IMG/VR virus record: IMGVR_UViG_3300026484_000007
Location: 208,603-272,602 of that record
DNA: 64,000 bases
Reading direction: 5' to 3' (one strand)
The notes under the pieces are model-generated. The model did not search any database, was not told the origin of the DNA, and was given only the letters and a program-made list of their open reading frames with translations. Shown in pieces: positions 5,217 to 60,617 of the stretch. Made by a program: the position numbers and the translations under genes. Within the stretch, counting starts at the first letter, position 1, and each line of letters starts with the position of its first letter.

Positions 5217-6283
5217 GCCAAATATCAAATCAAGTAAATCATAATTGTAAAGTTAAAAAATTATTTAATCCAGATGTTCAGGATGAACACAAATTATACG
5301 GAGGTTGTACGACAAATACATTAGATCTTGCTAACGTAAAATATCCAGTGTTCGTTGATTGGGTGGATAAACAATACGCAAATAACTGGTTACCTCAAAA
5401 AGTTGATATGACTGGGGATTATAGTCAATACTGGAATGATTTAACAGATGATGAAAGAGTTGCGTTTGATAATATTTTATCTTTCTTAATATTCTTAGAT
5501 AGTATTCAAACGAACAATCTTCCTAATATTGCAGATTATATTACATTACCTGAGGTTGTATATGCATTAGCAAGACAAACATATGACGAAGCAATACATA
5601 GTCGTTCATATGGATTAATATTAAATTTTAATATTAAAGATAAAGCTAAAATAGAAGAAATTACTTATCTTTGGAGAAAAAATAAAATTCTTTTAGAAAG
5701 AAATAAAAAAATTGCAGAGATCTATCAAGACGCAAAAGATAATCATTCTGATCTTAATTTTATCAAAGGTCTTATAGGGAATTTTATGTTAGAAGGAATT
5801 TATTTTTATAATGGATTTCAGTTCTTTCATAATCTTGCATCAAGAGGTCTTATGATTGGAACAGATACTCAAATCAGATATATCCAAAGAGATGAATTAG
5901 GACATTTAAAGCTTTTCGCTGATATTATTAAAATATCGCAAGAAGAAAATCCAGAAATTTGGACAGACGAAGTTAAAGAAATCGTTTACGATATGTTTAG
6001 AGATGCTGTAGATCTTGAAATTAAATTTAGTCAAGATGTTATTGGAGATAAAATTCTTGGAATGAGTTCACAAGCAATCGAAGATTACGCTTATTGGCTT
6101 GGGAATAAAAGACTTAAAGAAATTAAATTAAAACCAATTTTTCCAGAAAGAAAAAATCCTTATTCTCATTTAGAAAAAATTGCTTCTGTCGAAGATGAAA
6201 GTTCAAATAGAACTAATAACTTCGAAAGCACATCAATTACTTATAAATCTCCAGAAATTCTTGATGGATGGGATCAAATTTAA
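5213..6283 (+). CDS. nrdB: ribonucleoside-diphosphate reductase class Ia beta subunit
   Basis: NNWLPQKV, FLDSIQ, EAIHSRSY, LEGIYFYNGF, IQRDELGH, NFESTSITY. Confidence 0.97.
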   Translation: MSQISNQVNHNCKVKKLFNPDVQDEHKLYGGCTTNTLDLANVKYPVFVDWVDKQYANNWLPQKVDMTGDYSQYWNDLTDDERVAFDNILSFLIFLDSIQTNNLPNIADYITLPEVVYALARQTYDEAIHSRSYGLILNFNIKDKAKIEEITYLWRKNKILLERNKKIAEIYQDAKDNHSDLNFIKGLIGNFMLEGIYFYNGFQFFHNLASRGLMIGTDTQIRYIQRDELGHLKLFADIIKISQEENPEIWTDEVKEIVYDMFRDAVDLEIKFSQDVIGDKILGMSSQAIEDYAYWLGNKRLKEIKLKPIFPERKNPYSHLEKIASVEDESSNRTNNFESTSITYKSPEILDGWDQI

Positions 6284-6305: not shown

Positions 6306-6491
6306 ATGTTACTTAAAGAATGTAATGGTTGCAAATATCTAGCTCGATTGATCGGTATAGGTCAAGGAGTTAGATGTACAAATCCAGAAAATCAAATAAC
6401 TGGAATGGATGGATCAAAAGCGATAGTTATATCTCAGATAGAGAATTGTAATTATTATAAGCAACATAAAAAAGATAAGAAAGAATCTTAA
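6306..6491 (+). CDS. small Cys4 (zinc-binding-like) protein
   Basis: AAAGGA RBS before the ATG at 6306; CNGC...C...C pattern. The track's start at 6180 overlaps nrdB and is unlikely. Confidence 0.6.
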   Translation: MLLKECNGCKYLARLIGIGQGVRCTNPENQITGMDGSKAIVISQIENCNYYKQHKKDKKES

Positions 6492-6512
6492 AAGGATCTT
6501 AAAAAGATCCAA

Positions 6513-6540
6513 TTGAAATATTTTTTTTGAAATTTAAGAT
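6513..6540 (+). promoter_or_regulatory. sigma70-like promoter for the large ncRNA
   Basis: TTGAAA-N16-TAAGAT ending about 9 nt before the first strand of the closing helix. Confidence 0.45.
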
Positions 6541-6672
6541 TTTCTTTAACTTTCTTTATCAGGCGATAAAAATCGAATAATCCCGCCTGACTGGAGCGAA
6601 ATACCAGTCACAAAATTATTTTACATGGGTTAAAATAAGGAGATCGCACTGAAGATGCGCTTTTATAATTAC

Positions 6673-6744
6673 ACCAAAAACGAAGGTTCGATTCCTTCCT
6701 TTCCCAACATAATAGGGAAAGTAGCCAAGAGGTAAGGCATTGGT
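6673..6744 (+). tRNA. circularly permuted tRNA-like domain (3' half precedes 5' half, no closed anticodon loop)
   Basis: ACCAA-aaac-GAAGG-TTCGATT-CCTTC-CTTTCCC-A, 8-nt linker, then GGGAAAG-TA-GCC-AAGAGGTAA-GGC-A-TTGGT. All four stems pair perfectly. Confidence 0.8.
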
Positions 6745-6775
6745 TCCAAAATATAAATATATAACAATCGAACGA

Positions 6776-6859
6776 AAAGTTCAAAGTAAAAAATTTAAAA
6801 TTTAATGCTTAAATACTAACTACTAAAAATTAACCTTCAAAATTTAAAATAAAAAGCTT
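6776..6859 (+). repeat. 12 consecutive degenerate 7-nt units, each starting AA
   Basis: aaagttc aaagtaa aaaattt aaaattt aatgctt aaatact aactact aaaaatt aaccttc aaaattt aaaataa aaagctt. Confidence 0.7.
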
Positions 6860-6938
6860 TTTAAAATCTTGGAGGAAGTTTTAAGTGGCGAGGATTAGCC
6901 CGATTTTTGATCCAAGCTGCTTGATAGAGAAAGACTTC

Positions 6939-6976
6939 AAAACCCTCGCATAGTGCGAGGGTTTTTTTGTCGTTAG
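6939..6976 (+). terminator. intrinsic terminator with GTCGTTAG tail
   Basis: AAAACCCTCGCA-TAG-TGCGAGGGTTTTTTT. Confidence 0.9.
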
Positions 6977-7015
6977 AAAAAATTAGATAAAATTAGAAAA
7001 ATAAAAAAATTTTGT

Positions 7016-7110
7016 AAATAAAATCTATGGGGAGCAATGCTCCCCATAGGGGGACTTTGTCCCCCTTGGAGGAGTGGAGACTTTTCGTCTCCACTCCTCT
7101 CTTTCTGCTA
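7016..7110 (-). ncRNA. GC-rich triple-hairpin cassette 1 (putative small RNA; strand uncertain)
   Basis: Hairpins CTATGGGGAGC/GCTCCCCATAG, GGGGGAC/GTCCCCC and GAGGAGTGGAGAC/GTCTCCACTCCTC. Leftward promoter-like motif at 7116-7145. On the - strand the last hairpin is followed by ATTTTATTT. Confidence 0.5.
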
Positions 7111-7115
7111 TTTAT

Positions 7116-7145
7116 ATATCAATTAAAACTAAAGCAGTTCTAAAA
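7116..7145 (-). promoter_or_regulatory. bipartite motif TTTTAGAACT-N14-(A/T)GATAT (putative phage promoter)
   Basis: Same motif and spacing at 7334-7363, 7966-7995 and 8695-8724, the last directly upstream of the only - strand gene. Confidence 0.55.
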
Positions 7146-7166
7146 AATCTCCGTAAATAAAATTAC

Positions 7167-7328
7167 AAATAAAATCTATGGGGAGCATTGCTCCCCATAG
7201 GGGGACTTTGTCCCCCACTCACTGGGGTGGTTGCCCACATTGGCAACGGGAGCAATCCCGCTCATTTGAGCGGGGCCCGACCACCCCGGAGGACTCACCT
7301 CCTTTCTTGGAGTCCTCCTTTTTTGCTA
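7167..7328 (-). ncRNA. GC-rich multi-hairpin cassette 2 with SD/anti-SD loop (putative small RNA; strand uncertain)
   Basis: Shares the two terminal hairpins with cassettes 1 and 3. Extra multibranch domain at 7224-7287. Hairpin 7288-7318 has loop ACCTCCTTTCTTG. Confidence 0.55.
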
Positions 7329-7333
7329 ATTAA

Positions 7334-7363
7334 ATATCTGATAAAACTAAAGCAGTTCTAAAA
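7334..7363 (-). promoter_or_regulatory. TTTTAGAACT-N14-AGATAT motif
   Basis: Copy of the bipartite motif, followed on the - strand by TAGCAAAA. Confidence 0.55.
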
Positions 7364-7442
7364 AATCTTTATAAATAAATTTAAAAAATCTTTTCTAAAA
7401 CAATATATAAATTATCAATTAAAATATATAAGGAGATTAATT

Positions 7443-7727
7443 ATGGCAACTGCTTTTCATAAAGATTACAATGCAGAATACGTAATCGGTGATGACGTTG
7501 TAAATTCTGAAGAAGTAAAAAATACTCAGCCAACTGTATTATCTAAAATTATAGATGGAAAACCAGCTGATGTTAATACCGAAACTAAAGATATGCTAAC
7601 CGAAGAAACTGTATGGTTTAGAAATGACAGAATCAGACAAACTCTTCAAGATCAATACACTGAAGTTTCTAGACAAACTTTTGAAATTGATCAATTTGAA
7701 ACTACTGATTTACCAGGAAATCCATAA
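7443..7727 (+). CDS. hypothetical protein
   Basis: 94 aa, AAGGAG RBS. Confidence 0.75.
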   Translation: MATAFHKDYNAEYVIGDDVVNSEEVKNTQPTVLSKIIDGKPADVNTETKDMLTEETVWFRNDRIRQTLQDQYTEVSRQTFEIDQFETTDLPGNP

Positions 7728-7778: not shown

Positions 7779-7826
7779 AAAACTCCGGAGTTCTAAAATA
7801 GAGCTCTGGAGTTTTTTTGTCGTTAG
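7779..7826 (+). terminator. intrinsic terminator with GTCGTTAG tail
   Basis: AAAACTCCGGAGTTCT...AGAGCTCTGGAGTTTTTTT. Confidence 0.7.
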
Positions 7827-7865
7827 AAAAAATTAGAAAAAATTAGAAAAAATAAAAAAATTTGC

Positions 7866-7960
7866 AAATAAAATCTATGGGGAGCAATGCTCCCCATAGG
7901 GGGACTTTGTCCCCCTTGGAGGAGTGGGGAATTTTCATCTCCACTCCTCTCTTTCTGCTA
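7866..7960 (-). ncRNA. GC-rich triple-hairpin cassette 3 (near copy of cassette 1)
   Basis: Part of a ~185-bp direct repeat (6961-7145 vs 7811-7995). Confidence 0.5.
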
Positions 7961-7965
7961 TTTAT

Positions 7966-7995
7966 ATATCTAATAAAACTAAAGTAGTTCTAAAA
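7966..7995 (-). promoter_or_regulatory. TTTTAGAACT-N14-AGATAT motif
   Basis: Copy of the bipartite motif. Confidence 0.55.
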
Positions 7996-8042
7996 ATAAT
8001 TAAAAATTAATGCGAAAAAAAGAGACAGAAGCGTCAGTAGGC

Positions 8043-8824: not shown

Positions 8825-10273
8825 ATGGGTTTTGATTTACTCGATATAAATAAATTTATTAAAGAAAAGGATGCTAAAGAAGTAACATCCGAAAAAACAT
8901 TTTTATTTACAAAAGGCGATTTTATTCCAGATCCAAATGGTTTATATAGTCCACAGATCTTCGAAGGAACTGGTATTAAAGGACAACGGGATAAATACGG
9001 ATACATATCTTTAAAAAATACAATTATGCATCCATTAATTTATAAGAATCTAAAAAAGATTGCTACAATTTTTTATTATGTAGCAACTTCTGAAAAACAC
9101 GTTGAAATTATTGATGGTGAACTTATAGAAACACCACCAGAAAACGGTGGTAAAACTGGATTAGACTTTCTAATAAATAATTGGAAAAAAATTAATTTAG
9201 ATAAATACAAGAAAGAAACGAATGAATTCTTTATTGAGTTTCTAAAGAAAGTTCAAGAAAAATTAATTTTTATTAATAAACTTCCAGTTATTCCAGTACT
9301 TTATCGACCTTATACTTTTGAACACGGACGAGTAATTGAAGATGAAATTACTGAAAAGTATAAAAAAATTTTATTAGAATACAAAAAAACTATGGGAGGT
9401 CTTTCCGGTCAGCCTTTGAATTCGTTGAATTCTAAAAATTTAACTGCGTCTGAAGATGCAGTTAGTTTAACTGGAAGAAGATCTACTATATCTAACATTG
9501 ATAACCCATTAGGTATTTCTGATGATAATGGATTAGAATTATTAAATTCATTTATTCAGAATAATGTAAATTCTTCAGAAAAAGTTCAAAAATACGTTCA
9601 GGATCTATATGATTATTTTATTTCTAAATTAGAGAAAAAAGAAGGTTTCTTTAGAAGTAATTTAGTAGGTAAAAGATTAGATAATGTATCAAGATTAGTT
9701 GCTAATGCTCGTCCAGATATACCAGTAGATTGCGTAGGTATTCCTTGGCATGTATTAATTAATATTTTTGATTATTACGTATTAGCTGAGTTAGAGCATA
9801 ATAAAGATGTCGCTGAAAAACTTGGTCTTGCTGACATTAGTACAGTAGACTTTGGAAAACACATCTATTATATCTATAAAAACTGTGATATTTATTGCAA
9901 GTCGTTTCCTGAAAGACAACAGATATGGATAGAATTACTTACAGAAATCTTTGATAAACATGATTATCTTAGAGTAGTATTTAAACGGGATCCAGGTTGG
10001 TCAGCGAATTCATTCTGGTCAGTAAAACCATTAATCTTAAAAGGATGTTCGTATTACATTGTTGTAAATTCATTTTATTACAAACCACTTGGTGGAGATA
10101 GTTTTAATACTAATATTCTAATTAAAGAATCTACTCAAAAATCTATTACTAAAGATTTAATTTTATCAAAGGATCCAAAAAAGATCCAAAAAAGATATAC
10201 GTTAGAATTTCCAGTAGCTAATGAAGCAAAAACATTAAAAAATTATTACGAAAAAAATAAAAAGGAGAAATAA
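8825..10273 (+). CDS. DNA-directed RNA polymerase beta' subunit, N-terminal fragment
   Basis: GLYSPQIF, YGYISL, LPVIPVLYRP, KKEGFFRSNLVGKRLD, VVFKRDP. Ends at PLGGD (NADFDGD position) followed by an unrelated 57-aa tail. Confidence 0.88.
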   Translation: MGFDLLDINKFIKEKDAKEVTSEKTFLFTKGDFIPDPNGLYSPQIFEGTGIKGQRDKYGYISLKNTIMHPLIYKNLKKIATIFYYVATSEKHVEIIDGELIETPPENGGKTGLDFLINNWKKINLDKYKKETNEFFIEFLKKVQEKLIFINKLPVIPVLYRPYTFEHGRVIEDEITEKYKKILLEYKKTMGGLSGQPLNSLNSKNLTASEDAVSLTGRRSTISNIDNPLGISDDNGLELLNSFIQNNVNSSEKVQKYVQDLYDYFISKLEKKEGFFRSNLVGKRLDNVSRLVANARPDIPVDCVGIPWHVLINIFDYYVLAELEHNKDVAEKLGLADISTVDFGKHIYYIYKNCDIYCKSFPERQQIWIELLTEIFDKHDYLRVVFKRDPGWSANSFWSVKPLILKGCSYYIVVNSFYYKPLGGDSFNTNILIKESTQKSITKDLILSKDPKKIQKRYTLEFPVANEAKTLKNYYEKNKKEK

Positions 10274-14746: not shown

Positions 14747-15154
14747 ATGGCTAATAAAAATTATACAGTTGGCCTTGATAAAAAATATTTAGATCTAGTT
14801 GACGCAGATCTAACTCCAGAAAATCAAAGATTTTTAAATGATTACGTTGCTAAAAAATTAAGAATGATAGATAACACTATCATCGCAAATCATCTTAAAA
14901 AAATGGATCAAGAAGCTTCTCATTATAAAAATCTTGATAACTTTGAAAAACAAGAGATAATTAATTCCGAAAGATGGAAAAATCCATTGATCGGTGCAAC
15001 TATTGGAGGAGCTCTTGGTTTTGGACTTACTGATGTAATCAGTGGAAATCCTACGACCGATGGAATATTTGGCGCTCTTGGGTTAGGAGTTGGAGCTTAT
15101 CAAGGTAAGAAATATACTGATTTTAAATTAAAAAGGCAAGGATTGATAAAATGA
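14747..15154 (+). CDS. glycine-zipper membrane-type protein
   Basis: GATIGGALGFG and GALGLGVGAY. Confidence 0.65.
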   Translation: MANKNYTVGLDKKYLDLVDADLTPENQRFLNDYVAKKLRMIDNTIIANHLKKMDQEASHYKNLDNFEKQEIINSERWKNPLIGATIGGALGFGLTDVISGNPTTDGIFGALGLGVGAYQGKKYTDFKLKRQGLIK

Positions 15155-15894
15155 AACGAAGAAATTATTTTAATTATTTAAAAGGATCTGCAAAAGATCT
15201 TTTAGAAGAAAATGATCGTTATCGAGCGTTCTATCCCACTTCCACTGCCGCTGCCGCTCCACAAAGATCAATTTGGTCGGATATGAAAAACGGCGCAAAA
15301 AATCTTGGGAATAGCATAGTAAATTCTGCTAGTAAATTTGGATCTAAAATAACTAATGACCCAAAAATTGCTGCAGCTACAGGAGCAGCGATAGGTGGAG
15401 CTCTTCATCTTTACGATGTTCATGATGCAAAATCTGATTTATCTGATCTTATGGGCAAAAATTTTGATGCAGAAAAAATTAATAAAGATACATTCAATAG
15501 CAATTATGAGCAATACAAAGATCTTTATAATAAAGAAGGTATTAATAAATTTGATGCGAATAACGATGGATACTTAGATAAAAACGAACTTCATAAACTT
15601 TATAATACATATAAAAATGATACAAGTTGGTTCCCGTGGTGGAATGATGCAGATGATAAAATCAGTGCGGCTAAAGAATATTATGATTATATTCAAAAAA
15701 CTCCAGCAATGGATTTTAATAAAGATGGAATTGTAGATTCTAATGACACTAAAGCAATGAAAGATGTTGATCGTGTCGTTAATAGTAGTTTACCTGCGAA
15801 CTTAATGGGTGGTGCTGCAATTGGAGGAGCTCTTGGATATGGAACTAATAAACTTAATTCAAAACTTAATTCAAAATTTGGAGGACATTCATGA
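15151..15894 (+). CDS. glycine-zipper protein with two EF-hand-like loops
   Basis: GAAIGG at both ends; DANNDGYLDKNE and DFNKDGIVDSND. Confidence 0.65.
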   Translation: MKRRNYFNYLKGSAKDLLEENDRYRAFYPTSTAAAAPQRSIWSDMKNGAKNLGNSIVNSASKFGSKITNDPKIAAATGAAIGGALHLYDVHDAKSDLSDLMGKNFDAEKINKDTFNSNYEQYKDLYNKEGINKFDANNDGYLDKNELHKLYNTYKNDTSWFPWWNDADDKISAAKEYYDYIQKTPAMDFNKDGIVDSNDTKAMKDVDRVVNSSLPANLMGGAAIGGALGYGTNKLNSKLNSKFGGHS

Positions 15895-16658
15895 AAAATA
15901 TAAAAAAGACAAGAACGCTTAATTATTTAAATGAGGCATCTAATAGAGATCTTTCAATTGCTTTAACTGGATTAGGTTTTGGAATTGGTGGAGCCGCTCT
16001 TGGCGACTCAATATATGATGCTCACTTAGATCATTATAATTCCGAATTCCAAAAACAATTTTCCGATATTAATGCCACCAAAGATCAATTATTGAATGAA
16101 AAATTTGGTGATCCTGAAAATAATAAAGAAGCTCTTCAATCATATCAAGATCAATACAATAAAATAAAATTTGCTGATTTTAATAAAGATGGTTTCGTTG
16201 ATGAACGAGAATACAACAAAGCACTTGAAAATTATAAAAATTATATTAACAGCGGAGGTAATAATCCATTCTCTGATAATTATAAAAATTTAGATTATAA
16301 ACCAGATACAGTAAAACAATTAAATACTTATAAAAATTTATTACATGATAAAGATTTTGTATCTAAATTCGATGTAAATCAAGATGGAACATTTAACGCA
16401 AGAGAATTACAGTTATTGAAAAAACTTCCAGAGTATCAAGACAGAATGAATTCTTTTGAATATCAACCATATTTATATGGAACTGCTGGAGCAATAGCGG
16501 GAATGAAATTAATGGATGCTGCGACTAGAGGCGAAAGTTCTGATAAAGATCGAATAAATTTTCCAAGTAATAGATTTGCTCCGTTTGGTGCTCCAAAAAG
16601 ACCAAACGAATCTCAAGAAATCGTAGATAAAGTTCCACTACCACCGATAGTAAAATAA
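15891..16658 (+). CDS. glycine-zipper protein with two EF-hand-like loops
   Basis: GLGFGIGGAALG; DFNKDGFVDERE and DVNQDGTFNARE; C-terminal GTAGAIAG. Confidence 0.65.
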   Translation: MKNIKKTRTLNYLNEASNRDLSIALTGLGFGIGGAALGDSIYDAHLDHYNSEFQKQFSDINATKDQLLNEKFGDPENNKEALQSYQDQYNKIKFADFNKDGFVDEREYNKALENYKNYINSGGNNPFSDNYKNLDYKPDTVKQLNTYKNLLHDKDFVSKFDVNQDGTFNARELQLLKKLPEYQDRMNSFEYQPYLYGTAGAIAGMKLMDAATRGESSDKDRINFPSNRFAPFGAPKRPNESQEIVDKVPLPPIVK

Positions 16659-49546: not shown

Positions 49547-50509
49547 ATGCTAAATGAAATTACTTTATTTATCACAAAAGAATGCAATATGAACTGCGAT
49601 TATTGTACTCAAGAAAATAATAAAGATTCGATAGATGATAATGAATCGCTAGAGTTAACAATCAAAACAATTGAAAGTTTAATCAAAGATAAAAAATTAA
49701 GTTCAAAAACTTCGTGGCATTTTTTTGGAGGAGAACCTACTTTAAAATTCGATAAAATGTTAAAATTATATAAGTATTTAAAAACTCAAGGCTTTAAAAA
49801 TTTTAAATTATTTACTAATGGATTAATAAAAGAATCTTTTTTAGATCACATTCCAAATGATATAATGATTTCGATATCCTACGATGGATTGTCTCAGAAA
49901 AATCGATCTTCAAAAGATCGTGATAAAATTATTAATAATATTAAATATTTAATTACTAAAAATAATTTTGAAAAAATAAATTTCATTTATGATGAATTTT
50001 TATTAAAAAATTATTTTTTTATTAGTGATCTTTTAAAGATCCCTGAGTGGAAAATTACACATAGTTTAAATAGAAATTTTTATTGGTGGACTCCAGAAAG
50101 AATTGAAAAATATTTAACCGAATTTAATGCTTTAGCAGAATATAATTTTTTTGCAAATATATATAGAAAAAATAAAGATATCGAAGATATATATTTTATG
50201 TATTTTCAAAATATATTTAATCAATCAAAAAGATCGATTTTAGGATGTGGGCTTAAAGATTCTCGAATAAGTATATATCCAGATGGATCTATCAAAAATT
50301 GCGGAATTAGATCATTTAATGAAGATGATTATGTTTCTCAAAAAGAGATTGAATCTTTTTGTAAAAATTGTGAAGCTTATAAATTCTGCGATAAAAAATG
50401 CCCTATCGAAATGAAAAAATTTCCAGAGCTTTTTCAATATTCTTTTTGTGAAATAAAAATAAATGAAATTAAAACGCTTGAAAAATATTTTAAAAAGGAA
50501 CTTAAATGA
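49547..50509 (+). CDS. radical SAM protein with SPASM-type C-terminus
   Basis: CNMNCDYC, FFGGEP, TNG, SYDG; CG...C...CKNC..FCDKKCP. Confidence 0.9.
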   Translation: MLNEITLFITKECNMNCDYCTQENNKDSIDDNESLELTIKTIESLIKDKKLSSKTSWHFFGGEPTLKFDKMLKLYKYLKTQGFKNFKLFTNGLIKESFLDHIPNDIMISISYDGLSQKNRSSKDRDKIINNIKYLITKNNFEKINFIYDEFLLKNYFFISDLLKIPEWKITHSLNRNFYWWTPERIEKYLTEFNALAEYNFFANIYRKNKDIEDIYFMYFQNIFNQSKRSILGCGLKDSRISIYPDGSIKNCGIRSFNEDDYVSQKEIESFCKNCEAYKFCDKKCPIEMKKFPELFQYSFCEIKINEIKTLEKYFKKELK

Positions 50510-50916
50510 ATTCAGAACTTATCTTATACAAGTATCTTATTACAGATAAAATACGATCTTTAAAAGATCTTTTTAATCTTAATCCAGATGAAAAATTAAT
50601 TTATGCAATAGATAATTTATTAGAGAGCGCTATTCTTTTTGAATCTTTAAATGATTCAAAACTAGAAAAAATTTCAGAAGAATTATTTAATCTTCATGAA
50701 AGATTATATTCGGAAATAGAAAATATAGTTCATAAAAAATTCCAAAATGAATTATTAAATGAAAAAATTATTAAAGAAAAGCAAGAGTACTACGAAGAGA
50801 TCTTAAAAAGATCACAAACTGATTTAGACAAAAAAGAATATGAAGATATCGAATCTCTCGAATTTCAATTGAAAAAGGATATAAGAAAGGATACAAGAAA
50901 GGATACTAAAAAATGA
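50506..50916 (+). CDS. hypothetical helical protein
   Basis: Translationally coupled to both neighbours. Confidence 0.7.
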   Translation: MNSELILYKYLITDKIRSLKDLFNLNPDEKLIYAIDNLLESAILFESLNDSKLEKISEELFNLHERLYSEIENIVHKKFQNELLNEKIIKEKQEYYEEILKRSQTDLDKKEYEDIESLEFQLKKDIRKDTRKDTKK

Positions 50917-52100
50917 AAGAAGCATCAAAAAATACAATAGAAAACACGGTAGTGATCGATTTAATTACTAATAAAGATTGCAATATGAATTGCAAGTATT
51001 GCTTTGAGCAAGGACATTTTAAGAATACTCAGCTAACCGAAGAAACAATAAATAATATTTTTAATTATATTAAATTATTAAAAGAAAAAGATCCTTCGGT
51101 AAATTTTGAATTTATTTTAATTGGTGGAGAACCGAGCATCGCAAAAAATTTAAATTTATTTTTAGAAAAATTGAAAACCTTAGACGAAAAGGATCTAAAA
51201 AAGATCACTTATATGACAAATGGATTATCAAAAGAAAAAATTGAAAATCATTTAAATCAAATAAATAATCTAATTGATCCTAAAAAGATCGAACTTCAAA
51301 TTTCTTATGATGGAAAAGGTTTTCATGATAAAAATAGATTATTTAAACAACAAGGGAATTTAATTCCTACAAGTGCTATTATAAAAGAGAATATCGATTA
51401 TTTTTATAATTCTGGTAAATGTTATGTTACTATAAAAAGTACAATAACTTATCAAGATTTATTAGATAAAGGATCTTTATTAGATACATTAAACGATTTT
51501 GAAGAATTAAATGAAAAATACCATATATTATATTCCGTTTCAGAAGACAAAACATCGTTCGAAATTCCTGAGAATTTATTTAAAAATAATTTAAATAAAT
51601 TATTAGAATCGTTATTGATCTTAGAAAGATTCGAAAAAGATTTCTTTAAAAAGAAAGGATATTTTTTGACTAAATGGTTTAATGGTGCTAGTTATAGAGC
51701 AGATAATAAAACTTGTGGTATGGGAAATAAAATTATTAGTTTTTCTCCAACGGGAGATGCAATGGCTTGCCATGCAATTGAATACTACGACACTAATGAA
51801 TCTAAAAAAGATCTTTTATACGGAAATATCAATCAAGACTCTTTAGATAGCATTTATGAAAATTTTGAAAGAATTAAAAAAGAAATCAATAATAATAAAT
51901 ACAACCAATGCATAGATTGCAAAACTTTATATTGTAGCAAATGTCCAGCATACACTTTCGAATCTTTAAAAGATCTAAAAAAGATCTATACTGGATCTAA
52001 ATTAAATAATCAAAATTTATGCAACTTTTTTAATTTATTAAGCATAAATATTTATAGAGTTTATAAAGAATTAAATATTCTTGATAAGCTGAAAAAATAA
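50913..52100 (+). CDS. radical SAM/SPASM protein
   Basis: CNMNCKYC, IGGEP, TNG, ISYDG; CGMG...ACH...CIDC...CSKCP...C. Confidence 0.92.
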   Translation: MKEASKNTIENTVVIDLITNKDCNMNCKYCFEQGHFKNTQLTEETINNIFNYIKLLKEKDPSVNFEFILIGGEPSIAKNLNLFLEKLKTLDEKDLKKITYMTNGLSKEKIENHLNQINNLIDPKKIELQISYDGKGFHDKNRLFKQQGNLIPTSAIIKENIDYFYNSGKCYVTIKSTITYQDLLDKGSLLDTLNDFEELNEKYHILYSVSEDKTSFEIPENLFKNNLNKLLESLLILERFEKDFFKKKGYFLTKWFNGASYRADNKTCGMGNKIISFSPTGDAMACHAIEYYDTNESKKDLLYGNINQDSLDSIYENFERIKKEINNNKYNQCIDCKTLYCSKCPAYTFESLKDLKKIYTGSKLNNQNLCNFFNLLSINIYRVYKELNILDKLKK

Positions 52101-52112
52101 AAAGGAGAAATT

Positions 52113-52682
52113 ATGGCTAAGTGTACGTGCGAAGTGATTAGTGCGTGTTCTTCCACTTGGAACTCAAAGTATTGTAGTACAGTTTGTGCATGTAATGACG
52201 TTACATCTTGTTATGACGATTGTAGCGCTTATCTTTCGACATCTCAAGCTAGAGACGATTTTGATAGCACTAAAGAAGATGAGGTTAATACTGCTAGAGA
52301 TAATTTTAAAGGTAAAAAAGTAATTAAAATTTCCGATTTAAAAGCAATTCGAAAATATTTGAATGATATTGCTAAAAGTAAAAAAGATAGTTCTATCACA
52401 ATAGATGAATTAGATAAAAGTAAAGGAGATACCGTTGAAGCAGCTGACGCAGATGATCCAAGAAAAACTAGTTTAAAAATTGGCCTTTTATCTGGAGTAA
52501 ACGCTGCGAGCGCAACATATGATCTTGGAAATATGGGAGAAATTGAATCAGAAGACATCATTGATGGATCGCAATTAAAAACTATAGCCGAATCAATTGT
52601 TGATATAGCTTTATCATGCAGATGTGTTGGTTATTCAGCACAAACTTGTAATGATCAATGTGTTTGCGATTGTAATTATTAA
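52113..52682 (+). CDS. Cys-rich protein, candidate radical-SAM substrate / tail-tip component
   Basis: 8 Cys in the first 37 aa and 6 Cys in the last 21 aa (CVCDCNY end). Confidence 0.6.
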   Translation: MAKCTCEVISACSSTWNSKYCSTVCACNDVTSCYDDCSAYLSTSQARDDFDSTKEDEVNTARDNFKGKKVIKISDLKAIRKYLNDIAKSKKDSSITIDELDKSKGDTVEAADADDPRKTSLKIGLLSGVNAASATYDLGNMGEIESEDIIDGSQLKTIAESIVDIALSCRCVGYSAQTCNDQCVCDCNY

Positions 52683-52729
52683 AAAATTATTAAAATTATT
52701 AAATTTAAATTTATTAAAAAGGAGAAAAT

Positions 52730-53521
52730 ATGTATTATACTTATGTATTTATGAAAAAAGTTTCAGACAATTATTATCAACCGATATCAATAGATAGAGT
52801 TTTTCAAACAGTAGCACCATTCTTAAAATTAGATAATTTTGATTTAGCAGCAAGAATTGATGATCAAGCAATTCGATTAATAGAATATGCGTGGAAGAAT
52901 AAAGAATTTCCTTTAATAAAAGCAGATTATGGAGATATGGTTAGCGTCGACAAAATCATTGTTTTTTCAATGGAAGAATTCAGAAAAGAAATTCTCGCGA
53001 CTAGAAATCCTAATAAATTAAAAGGTAAAACAATTGAAGAGCTATTCGACGATGAAGATTTAAAAAATGAATATCTTTTTGAAAAAAGAAAAGAAGAAAT
53101 TCTTAAAGAGATTCTTAATCAATTCTTCCCAATGTTTAACGTTTGGGATTTAATGAATATGATTAAATATTTAGAATACTGGGGAATTTTATTTAATGAA
53201 GGAATTGTAATTTCTGAAAAAAATAAAGAAGACAAATTCATCGAAATCATTGAAAAAGACGATGATTATCTTTTAGAGATCCTTGAAAAATTCTTAGAAG
53301 CAAAAGAAAGATTTGATAAATTCAATAAAAGTTATTCAGTATATAATAATTTAATTCAAGAGATGGATGAAGTTATGTATTGGGATTTTGATACTTTCGA
53401 AGAAGCTATAGGCACTCTTGATAAAATAAGAAATACATATGTAGCACCAGAAAATTATACTTGGGATAGCGATCTTTATTTATTTAGAAAAATAAGAAAG
53501 GAATATCTTGATAAAAAATAA
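52730..53521 (+). CDS. hypothetical protein
   Basis: 263 aa, AAGGAG RBS. Confidence 0.75.
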   Translation: MYYTYVFMKKVSDNYYQPISIDRVFQTVAPFLKLDNFDLAARIDDQAIRLIEYAWKNKEFPLIKADYGDMVSVDKIIVFSMEEFRKEILATRNPNKLKGKTIEELFDDEDLKNEYLFEKRKEEILKEILNQFFPMFNVWDLMNMIKYLEYWGILFNEGIVISEKNKEDKFIEIIEKDDDYLLEILEKFLEAKERFDKFNKSYSVYNNLIQEMDEVMYWDFDTFEEAIGTLDKIRNTYVAPENYTWDSDLYLFRKIRKEYLDKK

Positions 53522-54377
53522 AAAGGATCGTAAGACTCATTATCATATAATCCTTTCGGATTATTGTGATCGAAGCTGTCCTTATTGTATAAATTCTTCG
53601 GATCAAAATGAGATCATATCAAAAGACGATTACGATTTAATTTTAAAAGAATTAAAAAAAGTTATTACAACAGATGATCTGCAAAAGATCGTTATCGAAT
53701 TTAATGGAGGGGAATTTACTTTAATAAAAAATATTGAATGGTATTTTGAAAGATTATCTTTTATTTTTCAAGATCTATCTAAAAGTGATCTAAAAAAGAT
53801 ACAAATAATACTTACTACGAATTTCATAGCAGAAAATATTATTTATAATAATATTTATGATCACTTGAGATCTTTTTTAGATCATGATCAAATATGGTTT
53901 TGGGTAAGCACGCACTATGATTATACTGAAGAAAATTATATTCAAAAATTAAAAGATTTTTTAAGTTATCATAAAATTAAAAATAATAAAATAAATTACT
54001 GGTTTAACACATTAACCGTTTCGAAAAAACATAATAAATACATTAATGATCTTAGAAAGATCGCAAAAGAAAAATTAAAAGAATTATTTGATTTTCATAA
54101 CATTATTTTTAGTACTTCCAATTTAATTCCAGTTTCTTCGCTGAAAAAGAATATATATTGGTATGACACCAAACCTAAATTATGCTCGGGAAATATTTAT
54201 TTAATTATGTATAAAGGAGTGAGCAATTATTGTAAAGAAGAATTTTTTTCTTTCAATGAGATCTTTAAAAGATACGAACAGGATAATCAAGGTAATCGAA
54301 GTATACTTTGTAAGAAATCCTGCACCGATCAAAAATTTGATGAAGAATTATTTAAGCCTAAATATTTAAAAAAATAA
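53508..54377 (+). CDS. radical SAM protein
   Basis: CDRSCPYC, NGGEF, TTN. Confidence 0.85.
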   Translation: MIKNKKDRKTHYHIILSDYCDRSCPYCINSSDQNEIISKDDYDLILKELKKVITTDDLQKIVIEFNGGEFTLIKNIEWYFERLSFIFQDLSKSDLKKIQIILTTNFIAENIIYNNIYDHLRSFLDHDQIWFWVSTHYDYTEENYIQKLKDFLSYHKIKNNKINYWFNTLTVSKKHNKYINDLRKIAKEKLKELFDFHNIIFSTSNLIPVSSLKKNIYWYDTKPKLCSGNIYLIMYKGVSNYCKEEFFSFNEIFKRYEQDNQGNRSILCKKSCTDQKFDEELFKPKYLKK

Positions 54378-54423
54378 TTAAAATAATTAAAATAATAAAA
54401 ATAATAAAAAGCAAGGGAAATTA

Positions 54424-55191
54424 ATGCAATATGTATATTATAGACTCGACCCTAAATATTTACAAGAAAAATATAAATTAGAAAGTACTCTTCAAGATTT
54501 TTTTTATGGATATCAAACGTTTATAAATCCAGAAAAGAAATACATAATTAAAAACATTCCTCCATTAATCAATCAAGATAAAGACGGCTATTTTTATTTT
54601 TGGAATAAATTTTTATCGTTATTTTCATATGCTAGCGATCATCATCGATTTACTTCGCAAGATATATATATTGATCACGATGTTTTTTTATTTAATTTGC
54701 CTTCCAAAGATACCGAGAATTCCAATAATTTTTATTATACTTATGGGATTTATAATAGCACTAATAAAGTTAGTGCAGCTTGTTTTTCTTTAAAAAAATT
54801 TGAAGATTTTAAATATTATTTTAAAGTTTTTTTTAGTTGTAATGATTATATTAGAAAGAAGCCAGAAAAATTCGAAGAATTTTTATTAACAGAGTGGATA
54901 AAATCATTCATGTCCGACAAAAATTCTGAAAAATTAAAGAAAAAAATCATAAAGTTTTCAGAAAATAAGATAACGTTAGAAAAGCAAAAAACCTTTAAAA
55001 ATTTTATACTACATTATCAGACAAATTTTTTATATCAATTTATTATAAAAAATAAAGATAGTATTAAAATATTTTTAAAAGAAAAATTTTATATTAAAAC
55101 ATTACATGATCTTTTAAAGATCCTTAAAGATCTTGAAAAGATTTATAAGGATTTAAAAAATGAAAAAATATCAAAAAGTTATTTTTTATAA
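54424..55191 (+). CDS. DxD-motif (GT-A-like) protein, paralog of 56135-56761
   Basis: RLDPKY..KY and YIDHD shared with the paralog. Confidence 0.45.
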   Translation: MQYVYYRLDPKYLQEKYKLESTLQDFFYGYQTFINPEKKYIIKNIPPLINQDKDGYFYFWNKFLSLFSYASDHHRFTSQDIYIDHDVFLFNLPSKDTENSNNFYYTYGIYNSTNKVSAACFSLKKFEDFKYYFKVFFSCNDYIRKKPEKFEEFLLTEWIKSFMSDKNSEKLKKKIIKFSENKITLEKQKTFKNFILHYQTNFLYQFIIKNKDSIKIFLKEKFYIKTLHDLLKILKDLEKIYKDLKNEKISKSYFL

Positions 55192-55945
55192 ATTAAATTT
55201 TTTCAATGGTAATCTTTTTTACGCATTTGAATATTTTGAATATCTACGAAAAAATAATTGGAAATTAATAATAGATTTAAATGGATCTTTAAAAGATCCA
55301 TTTAAACTTCCAATAAATAAAAAAATTTTATTTGAAGCGTTTCGAGAAAAATACAGTAAAAAATATCATAATTTATTTACTGAAATTATTTTCTTGAAAC
55401 CTTCAACTTTTTTTGTCGCCGATAAAATCCTTGTATTAGATCAAACCAGCATAAAATATTTAAATAAAACATTCGTGTCTAAAAAGATTATTTATAATTA
55501 TGGAGACGATGAGCGATCTTTAAAAGATCCTTTGAATAATAAAAATAATAAAAATAATAAAAATATTATTACGATAGGAGATAAAGATATCGGTTGTAAA
55601 ATTCAATATCATTATCCATTAAAATTAAATTTTAAAATCTTAAAACGTTTAAATTATAAAAGGATCCAAAAAAGATCCTTTTTGGAAAATAAAACAAAAA
55701 ACATCTATGAAAGAAAAAGAAATGTTAAAGATTTTCATTATACTTTCGATACTTTAATTTATAAAAAAGAAAATTTCTGGGAAAGAGCAAATCGATTAAT
55801 TCCAGAATGTAAATTTTATAATAAAGAAATAATATTTGAAAATAAAGATAAAAGAATTGATAGCGCAAATCTTCGCTATCAATCGTCGTGGAAAGATTAT
55901 AGTTTATATCATAGTGATTTTAAAGATTTCGTGGAAAATCTTTGA
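55160..55945 (+). CDS. glycosyltransferase-like (GT-B?) protein, paralog of 59644-60579
   Basis: GNLFYAFEY, AFREKY and RLIPECKFYNKEI shared with the paralog. Confidence 0.4.
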   Translation: MKKYQKVIFYKLNFFNGNLFYAFEYFEYLRKNNWKLIIDLNGSLKDPFKLPINKKILFEAFREKYSKKYHNLFTEIIFLKPSTFFVADKILVLDQTSIKYLNKTFVSKKIIYNYGDDERSLKDPLNNKNNKNNKNIITIGDKDIGCKIQYHYPLKLNFKILKRLNYKRIQKRSFLENKTKNIYERKRNVKDFHYTFDTLIYKKENFWERANRLIPECKFYNKEIIFENKDKRIDSANLRYQSSWKDYSLYHSDFKDFVENL

Positions 55946-56075
55946 TTTTTAAAGTAGCATCTATTTTCGATACAAGCGATATAAAAGCAGTTCTAAAAAA
56001 TTTAGAACTGCTTTAGAACTCGTATATATCTTTGGGTATCTAATGAAGCGCAACGTTTTAGGATCACGAGTTTTC
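55934..56075. repeat. ~140-bp dispersed palindromic element, copy G (inverted)
   Basis: Reverse complement reads GAAAACTCGTGATCCTAAAACGTTGCGCTTC...GATGCTAC. Confidence 0.85.
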
Positions 56076-56134
56076 AAAGGAAAAAATGAAAGTATAAATA
56101 AATTTATAAATAAATCAAAGTCAAGGAATTATTT

Positions 56135-57845: not shown

Positions 57846-57865
57846 AAAATTTAAGGATTAATTTT

Positions 57866-60579: not shown

Positions 60580-60617
60580 AAATAATTTTTTTTACTAGAA
60601 TTATCAAAAGGAATAAT

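What the first reader, a model, noticed from the sequence alone, without database searches (positions are those of the whole stretch)
6673..6744. Circularly permuted tRNA grafted into the large RNA through its anticodon stem
Seen: the 3' half of a tRNA (ACCAA, variable AAAC, T arm GAAGG-TTCGATT-CCTTC, acceptor strand CTTTCCC-A) comes first, then an 8-nt linker, then the 5' half (GGGAAAG, U8-A9, D arm GCC-AAGAGGTAA-GGC, TTGGT). The anticodon loop is replaced by the rest of the RNA, and TTTATA/TATAAA extends the stem. Known: this gene order is that of two-piece tmRNAs and permuted tRNAs, where RNase P and 3' trimming remove the linker. However, there is a full D stem, G3-C70 rather than G3-U70, and no ssrA-like tag. 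Inference: host tRNA-processing enzymes cut the RNA into two pieces with a CCA-addable, possibly aminoacylated end; alternatively it is a decoy for tRNA-targeting anti-phage nucleases or a ribosome-binding module. Standard tRNA finders may miss it.
Basis: partly seen in the sequence, partly recalled or inferred. Interest (0 to 1): 0.92.

Follow-up and report, generated by a model that had tools for sequence, protein, structure and literature searches.

The report
tRNA mimic inside phage noncoding RNA
A jumbo phage encodes a roughly 400-base structured RNA whose core is a perfect tRNA cloverleaf wired in reverse order (closed acceptor stem, open anticodon stem), the layout already known from bacterial Y RNAs (YrlA); here it has no Ro-type partner gene nearby and no relatives in the databases searched.

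Summary
Bases 6673-6744 (+) form a complete cloverleaf in permuted order: T arm, acceptor stem closed by a 9-nt loop, D arm, and an anticodon stem that opens into the surrounding RNA. ARAGORN calls a tRNA once the halves are re-ordered, and at no other position in the window. The module lies in a non-coding gap, inside an RNA of about 385 nt closed by a 35-bp long-range helix and followed by an intrinsic terminator.

It has the same topology. Its 7-bp-stem version in M. smegmatis is cut by RNase P and CCA-tailed.

The window element is not a canonical YrlA:
- It scores 22.7 bits against an Rfam threshold of 69.
- It lacks the Ro60-binding motif.
- No TROVE/DUF2828 gene was found in the 91 kb of the contig that was examined.

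It is not a tmRNA either: it has G3-C70, a full D arm and no tag.

Similar permuted modules occur in other viral contigs. Some sit beside Ro-like genes, and one sits inside a GOLLD RNA. No homologue of this particular RNA was found, so its conservation is untested.

Verdict: a real feature and a new variant of a known kind. Processing and function are inferred, not shown.

The parts
6513..6540 (+). Weak sigma-70-like promoter candidate (TTGAAA, 16 nt, TAAGAT) upstream of the RNA
   Evidence: 9 of 12 consensus matches. The region as a whole holds no more such sites than shuffles do, so this is only a candidate. The true 5' end is unknown.
6551..6587 (+). 5' strand of the long-range closing helix of the large RNA
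   Evidence: pairs with 6887-6932 in 35 bp split into 5 segments, pair probabilities 0.72-1.0. RNAduplex -43.0 kcal/mol, against -9.4 +/- 3.7 (minimum -27.0) for 1694 controls slid along the window.
6588..6610 (+). Hairpin (7 bp, 9-nt loop AGCGAAAUA)
   Evidence: pair probability 0.97.
6645..6659 (+). Small hairpin CGCA/UGCG, preceded by a Shine-Dalgarno-like AAGGAG (6638-6643)
   Evidence: pair probability 0.92.
6662..6667 (+). TTTATA, 5' strand of the helix that extends the anticodon stem
   Evidence: pairs with TATAAA 6752-6757 in the local minimum-energy fold. Not part of the full-length minimum-energy fold.
6673..6681 (+). Anticodon-stem 3' strand ACCAA (tRNA positions 39-43) and 4-nt variable region AAAC ending in C48
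6682..6698 (+). T arm GAAGG-TTCGATT-CCTTC
   Evidence: pair probability 0.98.
6699..6706 (+). Acceptor 3' strand CTTTCCC plus discriminator A73
   Evidence: pair probability 0.99.
6707..6714 (+). 8-nt linker ACATAATA that caps the acceptor stem. With A73 it forms a 9-nt loop. It is the predicted site of RNase P cleavage (6714/6715) and of 3' trimming (after 6706).
   Evidence: Sequence. Cleavage is inferred from the M. smegmatis YrlA precedent and was not tested.
6715..6739 (+). Acceptor 5' strand GGGAAAG, U8 A9, D arm GCC-AAGAGGTAA-GGC, A26
   Evidence: In one search the D arm TAGCCAAGAGGTAAGGC is identical in all 23 genomic hits (the GCCAAGAGGTAAGGC part was fixed by the search pattern); those whose titles name a taxon are Bacillota, and the downstream anticodons seen were GCA and TTG (tRNA-Cys/Gln).
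6740..6744 (+). Anticodon-stem 5' strand TTGGT (positions 27-31), which runs on into the rest of the RNA instead of an anticodon loop
6752..6757 (+). TATAAA, 3' strand of the extension helix
6770..6782 (+). Hairpin GAAC-GAAAA-GUUC
   Evidence: pair probability 0.95.
6822..6886 (+). Long interrupted hairpin (23 bp in 4 segments)
   Evidence: pair probabilities 0.71-0.98.
6887..6932 (+). 3' strand of the long-range closing helix
6939..6971 (+). Intrinsic terminator (12-bp G+C-rich stem, 3-nt loop, T7 run) ending the RNA
   Evidence: Rfam leader models align only to this terminator.

Best explanation
Bases about 6551-6971 (+) encode a stand-alone structured phage RNA of roughly 385-420 nt. Its ends pair in a 35-bp helix, and an intrinsic terminator follows.

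Its central domain (6673-6744) is a tRNA mimic of the YrlA (Y-RNA-like) type. It is a four-way junction with a T arm, a 7-bp acceptor stem closed by a 9-nt loop, and a D arm. The 5-bp anticodon stem serves as the stalk that connects it to the rest of the RNA. All elbow-forming bases are kept, so it should fold into the tRNA L-shape.

Proposed mechanism (inferred): the module presents a tRNA elbow and acceptor arm to proteins that recognise tRNA shape, such as RNase P, RNase Z, the CCA-adding enzyme, modification enzymes, or a still unidentified Ro-like partner. The rest of the RNA acts as scaffold or effector.

The module has the full 12-bp acceptor/T-arm stack, A73 and a single-stranded loop without an encoded CCA. 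I therefore think it more likely than not (about 55%) that host RNase P nicks it at 6714/6715 and that the 3' side is trimmed to A6706 and CCA-tailed, as happens to M. smegmatis YrlA. The two pieces would stay held together by the acceptor stem and the 35-bp helix.

Shown: the sequence, the fold potential, uniqueness in the window, and the existence of the class in other viral contigs.
Inferred: expression, processing and binding partners.
For: - Exact cloverleaf in permuted order with every conserved tRNA base.
- ARAGORN calls a tRNA only after re-ordering, and only at this site in the window.
- Rfam's YrlA model aligns over its full length, 1-114, at 6661-6761 (22.7 bits, E=0.011). The tmRNA models match only the tRNA-like part.
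- The module lies in a 950-nt gap without credible ORFs.
- The 446-nt stretch folds far better than shuffles (z = -6.6).
- The long-range helix scores -43 kcal/mol against -9.4 +/- 3.7 in slid controls.
- A terminator lies at 6939-6971.
- Literature: YrlA has the order T arm, acceptor-like stem-loop, D arm. It occurs in more than 250 bacteria and 22 phages. The 7-bp-stem M. smegmatis form is cut by RNase P and CCA-tailed (PMC4201824).
- The class exists elsewhere. Among about 125 viral T-loop-to-D-arm pattern matches, 10 had 7/7 acceptor complementarity against about 0.13 expected, and 7 of those are not tRNAs. In a table of 14 modules the closing stem, which was not used to pick the first set of modules (the later ones came from a covariance model that scores that stem), is 5/5 in 11 and 4/5 in 3, with eight different sequences.
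- Modules co-occur with Ro-like genes. TROVE/DUF2828 proteins (phrog_850) or phrog_33734 proteins were found in 5 of 12 module loci and in 0 of 101 other tRNA-array loci (p = 5.6e-6).
- A GOLLD RNA in L100 carries a permuted tRNA-like insert in its linker.
Against: - No homologue of this RNA was found anywhere: INPHARED, IMG/VR, JGI metagenomes and GTDB genomes.
- Phages related by RNR-beta lack it near that gene. There is therefore no covariation or conservation evidence for this RNA.
- The score is below Rfam's YrlA threshold (22.7 against 69 bits).
- The GNCGAAN0-1G Ro60-binding motif is absent. The nearest match is AUCGAAUA at 6572-6579.
- No TROVE, DUF2828, phrog_850 or phrog_33734 gene was found in contig positions 181.7-272.6 kb, whereas YrlA genes normally lie within 4 kb of rsr.
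- Only about 5 of 80 phrog_850 loci carry such a module within 5 kb.
- The anticodon and D stems are thermodynamically weak in the full-length ensemble.
- The promoter is only a weak consensus match, and expression is unverified.
Confidence: 0.5

Rival explanations
1. It is a canonical Ro60/Rsr-binding Y RNA. The partner gene would lie in the unseen 181 kb of the phage genome or in the host. The RNA would tether Ro to an exoribonuclease or gate its cavity, as in Deinococcus and Salmonella.
For: - Same module topology as YrlA.
- The long terminal helix with bulges resembles a Y RNA stem.
- Some jumbo phages encode ROT/TROVE proteins with a tRNA-like partner (PMC7824862).
- Other viral permuted modules lie next to TROVE/DUF2828 genes.
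Against: - The GNCGAAN0-1G motif is absent.
- No Ro-like gene was found in the 91 kb examined, although YrlA is nearly always within 4 kb of rsr and on the same strand.
- The RNA is three to four times longer than YrlA.
- The window's contig is not among the best 80 of 248 phrog_850 relatives in IMG/VR.
Confidence: 0.15
2. It is a two-piece, aminoacylatable RNA. After RNase P cleavage, 3' trimming and CCA addition, the acceptor end would be charged with an amino acid other than alanine and would act on the ribosome like a tmRNA, or as a tRNA-like cofactor.
For: - The gene order and overall length (about 385 nt) resemble two-piece tmRNA.
- Rfam's permuted tmRNA models match the tRNA-like part.
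- The module has a 7-bp acceptor stem and A73.
- M. smegmatis YrlA is a precedent for cleavage and CCA addition.
Against: - G3-C70 removes the alanine identity that all tmRNAs share.
- The D arm is full rather than reduced.
- No tag frame or PK1 was found. ARAGORN finds no tmRNA even at 80% thresholds.
- The window scores 18.7-22.5 bits against thresholds of 47-84, whereas a true phage two-piece tmRNA (L224) scores 119 bits.
- There is no anticodon, so most synthetases would lack identity elements.
Confidence: 0.06
3. It is a processing signal. The tRNA-like fold would serve only to recruit RNase P and RNase Z so that a longer transcript is cut at a defined place (tRNA punctuation), releasing or stabilising flanking RNAs.
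For: - The module meets the known shape determinants of RNase P and RNase Z substrates (established knowledge).
- No strong promoter lies directly upstream, so it may be co-transcribed with the RNR operon.
Against: - The 35-bp helix that joins the two flanks, and the module's own terminator, suggest one folded RNA rather than two products to be separated.
- Class members with tetraloop-capped acceptor stems are poorly suited to cleavage.
Confidence: 0.1
4. It is a decoy or sponge for a host anti-phage factor that recognises tRNA shape or acceptor ends. Candidates are toxins that modify or cleave the acceptor/CCA end, or enzymes titrated by a tRNA elbow.
For: - A perfect elbow and acceptor arm are kept in a genome of 27% G+C.
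- Phages are known to carry tRNA-related counter-defence genes (general knowledge).
Against: - There is no anticodon loop, so it cannot decoy anticodon nucleases.
- No defence or counter-defence gene was recognised next to it.
- The idea is purely speculative.
Confidence: 0.09
5. It is a non-functional relic. Two tandem copies of one tRNA gene would have lost the 5' half of the first copy and the 3' half of the second, leaving a permuted-looking pseudogene.
For: - Tandem tRNA-Gln genes with short spacers are common in phage tRNA arrays and look similar to the search tools.
- No homologue shows conservation.
Against: - All 20 pairs and all tertiary bases are intact in a very A+T-rich genome that has no tRNA gene in 64 kb.
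- No anticodon-loop remnants are present on either side.
- The module is framed by an extension helix, a 35-bp closing helix and a terminator.
- The same design recurs independently in other viral contigs with different stem sequences.
Confidence: 0.08

Closest known systems
YrlA, the tRNA-like bacterial/phage Y RNA (Rfam RF02553; Chen et al. 2014, PMC4201824)
   Same: - Order is T arm, acceptor-like stem closed by a loop, then D arm.
- The tRNA tertiary bases, including the 15:48 Levitt pair, are kept.
- The junction is closed by a helix leading to the RNA's 5' and 3' parts.
- The 7-bp acceptor version (M. smegmatis) is an RNase P and CCA-adding substrate.
- It is found in phages.
   Different: - The window scores 22.7 bits against a gathering score of 69.
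- No GNCGAAN0-1G motif.
- No Ro60/TROVE gene within the 91 kb examined.
- The RNA is about 385-420 nt rather than about 100-130 nt, with extra hairpins and a 35-bp terminal helix.
- The D arm is of the Bacillota tRNA-Cys/Gln type, not the GCUCA...GAGC type of the family consensus.
Two-piece (circularly permuted) tmRNA of alpha-/beta-proteobacteria and cyanobacteria (Rfam RF01849, RF01850, RF04321)
   Same: - Gene order: T arm and acceptor 3' strand, an intervening segment, then the acceptor 5' strand.
- Total length is similar.
- A helix extends from the tRNA-like domain.
- It is processed into two base-paired pieces.
   Different: - G3-C70 instead of G3-U70.
- A full D arm.
- No tag reading frame or pseudoknot detected.
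- Rfam matches only the tRNA-like part at 18.7-22.5 bits, whereas a genuine phage example (L224) scores 119 bits.
GOLLD RNA with tRNAs in its linker (Rfam RF02032; Kretsch et al. 2024, bioRxiv 10.1101/2024.12.08.627333)
   Same: A large ornate phage-encoded RNA that carries a covalently linked tRNA-shaped unit. In L100 the GOLLD linker holds a tRNA-like unit in permuted order.
   Different: - No match to the GOLLD or ROOL models in the window.
- The RNA is about half the size of GOLLD.
- It is not in a tRNA island: there are no tRNA genes in 64 kb.
- Multimerisation is unknown.
Circularly permuted tRNA genes of Cyanidioschyzon, prasinophyte algae and Thermofilum (Soma 2014, cited in PMC10085705)
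   Same: The 3' half of a tRNA is encoded upstream of its 5' half, and the acceptor ends are joined by a short intervening sequence that RNase P and 3' processing remove.
   Different: - Those genes encode a complete tRNA. Its anticodon loop is restored by circularisation at a bulge-helix-bulge motif cut by the splicing endonuclease.
- Here there is no anticodon loop and no such motif.
- Bacteria and their phages lack that endonuclease.

Membership tests
YrlA (Y RNA-like A) | tRNA-like domain in the order T arm, acceptor-like stem-loop, D arm, with conserved tRNA tertiary bases | tested here: met
YrlA (Y RNA-like A) | Reaches the Rfam RF02553 gathering score (69 bits) | tested here: not met
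   22.7 bits, E=0.011, full-length alignment.
YrlA (Y RNA-like A) | GNCGAAN0-1G motif near the 5' end (presumed Ro60/Rsr contact) | tested here: not met
   At the Rfam-aligned position the window has UUUUAUAAUUAC. The nearest look-alike is AUCGAAUA at 6572-6579, which lacks both flanking G.
YrlA (Y RNA-like A) | Encoded within about 4 kb of a Ro60 (TROVE) gene and on the same strand | tested here: not met
   No TROVE, DUF2828 or phrog_850 hit among the ORFs scanned. In the window all but one of the 45 ORFs of 150 aa or more were run through Pfam, and the upstream genes were covered by precomputed Pfam hits plus PHROG scans of the larger ones. Together these span contig positions 181.7-272.6 kb. 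The first 181 kb of the contig were not seen.
YrlA (Y RNA-like A) | Bound by Rsr/Ro60 in vivo | not testable with these tools
   Needs immunoprecipitation.
Two-piece tmRNA | Permuted gene order of the tRNA-like domain | tested here: met
Two-piece tmRNA | G3:U70 alanine identity pair | tested here: not met
   G6717 pairs with C6703, giving G3-C70.
Two-piece tmRNA | Tag reading frame with a resume codon downstream of pseudoknot PK1 | tested here: not met
   ARAGORN finds no tmRNA at default thresholds or at 95-80% thresholds. The Rfam tmRNA models cover only the tRNA-like part, at 18.7-22.5 bits against gathering scores of 47-84. The yardstick L224 scores 119 bits.
Two-piece tmRNA | Reduced D arm (no D stem) | tested here: not met
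   A 3-bp D stem and a 9-nt D loop with G18 G19 are present.
Circularly permuted tRNA gene (Cyanidioschyzon type) | The two halves together encode a complete tRNA, including a 7-nt anticodon loop | tested here: not met
   The anticodon stem is flanked by AUUAC (5' side) and UCCAAAA (3' side). These cannot be joined into a canonical loop with U33.
Circularly permuted tRNA gene (Cyanidioschyzon type) | Bulge-helix-bulge motif formed by leader and trailer for the splicing endonuclease | tested here: not met
   The flanks form a 6-bp helix after a 5/7-nt internal loop, not a 3-4-3 bulge-helix-bulge motif.
GOLLD / ROOL large phage RNAs | Match to the Rfam covariance model | tested here: not met
   No hit at gathering score in the window, and none at E<=10 in 6400-7500. 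The same tool finds GOLLD at 156 bits in L100.
Canonical tRNA | Contiguous 5'-to-3' cloverleaf with an anticodon loop | tested here: not met
   ARAGORN finds 0 genes in the window. There is no Rfam tRNA hit.

The most novel reading that the evidence does not exclude
The roughly 400-nt RNA would be the founding member of a new class of large phage RNAs that display a covalently attached tRNA mimic. Host RNase P, RNase Z and the CCA-adding enzyme would convert it into a nicked two-piece particle with a free, possibly chargeable CCA end. Such a particle could be a Ro-independent and alanine-independent counterpart of Y RNA and tmRNA, acting on the translation or tRNA-surveillance machinery during jumbo-phage infection.
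Probability: 0.1. Interest if true: 0.85.

Novelty: new variant of a known kind. Interest (0 to 1): 0.58.

Why it matters
tRNA mimicry by Y RNAs is known, but its purpose is still unclear, and it has so far been tied to Ro60. A perfect, RNase-P-competent tRNA mimic built into a much larger phage RNA, with no Ro-type gene nearby, would show that the module is a portable handle used in other RNA machines.

The side results point the same way:
- arrays of permuted modules in viral tRNA islands;
- a permuted tRNA-like unit inside a GOLLD linker;
- two protein families (phrog_850 and phrog_33734) that co-occur with these modules.

Together they give testable entry points to the long-standing question of what large ornate phage RNAs and bacterial Y RNAs do. 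Standard tRNA finders and Rfam thresholds miss all of these modules.

Tried and rejected
Searches for homologues of the window RNA all failed:
- blastn of 6480-7445 against INPHARED phages gave no match.
- The window-specific permuted pattern found only the source contig in IMG/VR and in JGI metagenomes.
- A looser pattern in GTDB genomes found 23 ordinary tRNA dimers and no permuted module.
- 17-mers from two other parts of the RNA gave only chance hits in coding DNA.

Relatives of the phage did not help:
- RNR-beta relatives in IMG/VR (at most 65% identity) and in the 5.8-billion-protein set (best 82%, on a 1.2-kb contig) do not carry the RNA next to the gene.
- RNAP-subunit relatives were too distant.
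- Exact-protein look-ups of the flanking small ORFs returned only the same contig.

Readings that were rejected:
- tmRNA.
- GOLLD or ROOL membership.
- A mobile element with terminal inverted repeats: the repeat has no second copy in the loci held.
- A protein-coding reading: the minus-strand 58-aa ORF 6608-6784 and the plus-strand 26-codon ORF 6655-6735 overlap the cloverleaf and have no support.

Other dead ends:
- Sequence search of the DUF2828 protein against PDB chains gave nothing.
- A literature search for DUF2828 was uninformative.
- Walking the contig upstream was stopped after 27 kb.

Caveat on the class evidence: the acceptor complementarity of the other viral modules was a selection criterion, so only the closing-stem pairing of the first, acceptor-selected set, the enrichment over expectation and the gene neighbourhood count as independent evidence.
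Full report
WHERE THE WINDOW COMES FROM

The window is the last 64 kb of a 272,602-bp viral contig (IMGVR_UViG_3300026484_000007 = Ga0256837_1000001). It has 27% G+C. It encodes split multisubunit RNA polymerase pieces, a T4-like portal, terminase, ribonucleotide reductase and several radical SAM proteins, so it is a jumbo phage. A dockerin/EF-hand ORF and a D arm identical to that of Bacillota tRNA-Cys/Gln hint weakly at a Bacillota host.

THE OBSERVATION

- ACCAA 6673-6677
- AAAC 6678-6681
- T arm 6682-6698
- CTTTCCC 6699-6705
- A73 at 6706
- linker ACATAATA 6707-6714
- GGGAAAG 6715-6721
- T8 A9
- D arm 6724-6738
- A26
- TTGGT 6740-6744
- TTTATA 6662-6667 and TATAAA 6752-6757

All 20 stem pairs are Watson-Crick. 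The bases that build the tRNA elbow are present (U8, A14, G15:C48, G18 G19, A21, G53, T54 T55 C56, A58, C61).

ARAGORN and Rfam (gathering thresholds) find nothing in native order. When the halves are re-ordered around any anticodon loop, ARAGORN calls a tRNA. The same re-ordering at all 127,856 positions on both strands gives calls only at this site, plus two junk calls. The feature is real and far beyond chance.

The local minimum-energy fold is the cloverleaf plus the TTTATA/TATAAA extension. In the full-length ensemble the T and acceptor stems are solid (0.98-0.99). The A/T-rich anticodon and D stems are weak (0.09, 0.23). This is usual for A/T-rich tRNAs, which depend on tertiary contacts, but it is a caveat.

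THE SURROUNDING RNA

The module lies in a 950-nt gap (6492-7442) between a small ORF that follows the RNR-beta gene and a 94-aa ORF.

Bases 6530-6975 fold with z = -6.6 against dinucleotide shuffles. Bases 6551-6587 pair with 6887-6932 in 35 bp (pair probabilities 0.72-1.0). RNAduplex gives -43.0 kcal/mol, against -9.4 +/- 3.7 (minimum -27) for 1694 same-geometry controls along the window.

Inside this closing helix lie several hairpins and the cloverleaf. An intrinsic terminator follows at 6939-6971. Only a weak promoter-like site precedes the RNA (6513-6540). So "a large RNA of about 385-420 nt" is well supported by single-sequence evidence. It is not supported by comparative evidence.

WHAT IT RESEMBLES

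With relaxed thresholds, Rfam's YrlA model (RF02553) aligns over its full length at 6661-6761 (22.7 bits, gathering score 69, E=0.011). The permuted tmRNA models match only the T arm/acceptor part (18.7-22.5 bits).

Chen et al. 2014 (PMC4201824) describe YrlA as follows:
- a T stem-loop, an acceptor-like stem-loop and a D stem-loop in that order;
- tRNA tertiary pairs, including a covarying 15:48 pair;
- a GNCGAAN0-1G motif near the 5' end, thought to contact Ro60/Rsr;
- a location within 4 kb of rsr, on the same strand.

It is found in 254 bacterial species and 22 phages. M. smegmatis YrlA is the one with a 7-bp acceptor stem. M1 RNA cleaves it in vitro at the predicted site, and in vivo it is cleaved and CCA-tailed. 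The Salmonella and Deinococcus RNAs are not cleaved.

MEMBERSHIP TESTS

The window element meets the topological definition of YrlA but fails the other tests:
- the score is below threshold;
- the Ro60 motif is absent (the nearest match is AUCGAAUA, 6572-6579);
- no TROVE, DUF2828, phrog_850 or phrog_33734 protein was found in the window's ORFs or in 27 kb further upstream, reached by walking the contig.

It is not a tmRNA. It has G3-C70 and a full D arm, and ARAGORN finds no tag even at 80% thresholds. A genuine phage two-piece tmRNA met in passing (L224) scores 119 bits.

It is not a Cyanidioschyzon-type permuted tRNA gene, because it has no anticodon loop and no bulge-helix-bulge motif. It is not GOLLD or ROOL.

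RELATED SEQUENCES

No homologue of this RNA was found in INPHARED, IMG/VR, JGI metagenomes or GTDB genomes. The nearest phages by RNR-beta (at most 65-67% identity; one 82% hit on a 1.2-kb contig) have unrelated sequence downstream of that gene.

THE CLASS IN OTHER VIRAL CONTIGS

A pattern "T loop, 18-48 nt, Gln/Cys-type D arm" in IMG/VR gave about 125 matches, mostly adjacent tRNAs. Ten had 7/7 complementarity between the strand after the T arm and the strand before the D arm, against about 0.13 expected. Three of the ten were tandem tRNA-Gln genes. Seven are not tRNAs according to ARAGORN.

With a covariance model of the window module (R1) and scripts, I collected 14 modules from 11 contigs.
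- The closing "anticodon" stem was not used to pick the first set of modules; the later ones came from the covariance model, which does score that stem. It is 5/5 in 11 modules and 4/5 in 3, with eight different sequences.
- The T stems are 5/5 in all.
- The variable region always ends in C.
- The caps of the acceptor stem range from 3 nt and GNRA-like tetraloops to 21 nt with a hairpin. A few contain an encoded N-CCA.
- Several contigs carry two or three modules in tandem within tRNA islands, each subfamily with its own conserved flank motifs.
- Two modules reach 36.7-38.1 bits on Rfam YrlA.

Next to the modules lie proteins of PHROG 850 ("RNA-binding protein"). This family unites a Pfam TROVE fragment (L104) and DUF2828+DUF7788 proteins (L091, L120, L146). 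Proteins of PHROG 33734 lie next to the modules in L100 and L122. Within the 113 loci fetched by the same pattern, such genes occur in 5 of 12 module loci and 0 of 101 others (Fisher p = 5.6e-6).

The converse is weak. Of the 80 best phrog_850 loci fetched from the protein side, only 4-5 have a recognisable module within 5 kb, and none of 13 sampled has YrlA above threshold. Seventy of the 80 sit in tRNA arrays.

One GOLLD RNA (L100:9181-9694, 156 bits) carries in its linker a T arm, an acceptor 3' strand with CCA, a 40-nt hairpin linker, an acceptor 5' strand, a D arm and an anticodon-like arm. That is a permuted tRNA-like unit that ARAGORN does not call. Grafting a permuted tRNA shape into a large phage RNA is therefore not unique to this window.

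MECHANISM

Shown:
- the sequence can form a canonical L-shaped tRNA body;
- its acceptor arm is closed by a 9-nt loop;
- its anticodon stem is the stalk to a larger folded RNA.

Inferred:
- The module is a handle for tRNA-shape-recognising proteins.
- It has the 12-bp acceptor/T stack, an intact elbow, A73 and a loop lacking CCA. Established knowledge of RNase P and of RNase Z in Bacillota, together with the M. smegmatis precedent, therefore makes a nick at 6714/6715, trimming to A6706 and CCA addition somewhat more likely than not.
- The pieces would remain joined by the acceptor stem and the 35-bp helix.

What the particle then does is unknown. It could tether a Ro-like or other protein, titrate a tRNA-binding factor, or act on ribosomes. 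I rank the canonical Ro60 reading, the aminoacylation/tmRNA-like reading, a pure processing signal, a decoy and a relic as rivals, each at 6-15%.

VERDICT

The element is a new variant of a known kind: a YrlA-type tRNA mimic in an orphan large phage RNA with no Ro-type partner in view.

Interest is moderate to high for RNA specialists. It is limited by the complete lack of comparative or expression evidence for this particular RNA.

Noticed in passing
window 6961-7146, 7154-7330, 7811-7996: A cassette of three consecutive G+C-rich hairpins (CTATGGGGAGCA..., GGGGGAC..., GGAGGAGTGGAGAC...) followed by a T-rich tail occurs three times around the 94-aa ORF. Bases 6961-7146 and 7811-7996 are 94% identical over 186 nt. 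The cassettes may be terminator clusters or stable RNA elements. They stand out at about 55-60% G+C in a genome of 27% G+C.
   Followed up: partly
window 7134, 7352, 17603/17611, 41548/41556, 41723, 55987: The motif GCAGTTCTAAAAAATCT (up to 3 mismatches allowed) occurs 8 times against about 1 expected, twice as overlapping palindromic pairs. It lies just upstream of TAAATAAA-like boxes and may be a phage promoter or regulatory site.
   Followed up: partly
window 6638-6735: A Shine-Dalgarno-like AAGGAG lies 11 nt before an ATG (6655) that opens a 26-codon frame. The frame runs through the cloverleaf and stops at 6733-6735. It is probably coincidental, but the AAGGAG is unusual in such an A+T-rich region and could be an RNA-RNA contact.
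   Followed up: no
window 49547-61622: Five radical SAM ORFs (49547, 50913 with a SPASM domain, 56751, 57866, 60618) cluster in the most A+T-rich part of the window (19-26% G+C). This suggests a phage-borne peptide- or nucleotide-modification cluster.
   Followed up: no
window 15151-16658: Two adjacent ORFs carry EF-hand motifs, and the second also has a dockerin type I motif. This hints at a cellulosome-related Bacillota host or environment.
   Followed up: no
L100:9240-9390 (inside GOLLD RF02032 at 9181-9694): The GOLLD linker holds a tRNA-like unit in permuted order: T arm, CCGGTGT-G-CCA, a 40-nt hairpin linker, ACACCGG, a D arm, and an anticodon-like arm with a 9-nt loop. ARAGORN calls no tRNA there. 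The papers read here mention tRNAs embedded in GOLLD linkers but not a permuted one.
   Followed up: partly
L100:2700-3130, L120:3700-4050, L091:4720-5050, L122:3130-3530, L154:1270-1480: Tandem arrays of two or three permuted tRNA-like modules lie within viral tRNA islands. Each unit is framed by a helix. Conserved flank motifs are specific to each subfamily: GGATCRTTTCAGCAA ... AAAAAGTTRATCC in L091/L120; TCATCCTTCT ... AAATTTCC in L122/L125; GCCAATRCTTATTTCTT ... TTGGCCAAAAA in L100.
   Followed up: partly
L122:3762-5993(-), L100:651-2627(+): Proteins of PHROG 33734 (unknown function, about 660-740 aa) lie immediately upstream of permuted-module arrays on the same strand in two unrelated contigs. 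They are a candidate second partner family besides the TROVE/DUF2828 family, phrog_850.
   Followed up: partly
L100:3273-5707, L089:1473-1585 and 5244-5356, L244:3630-4327: Many phage tRNA genes in these islands match the Rfam tRNA model over 113-196 nt. They therefore carry insertions of 40-125 nt, probably in the anticodon loop, which is unusually short for group I introns.
   Followed up: no
L224:1774-2139: A genuine two-piece (permuted) alpha-proteobacterial-type tmRNA gene (119 bits) lies on a viral contig, 3 kb upstream of a phrog_850 Ro-like gene.
   Followed up: no
L183 (Logan SRR7968107_19031): A 1.5-kb contig from an independent sequencing run encodes a protein identical to window ORF 407-847. 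The same phage or a very close relative is therefore present in SRR7968107, and reads from that run could give variants of the RNA.
   Followed up: no
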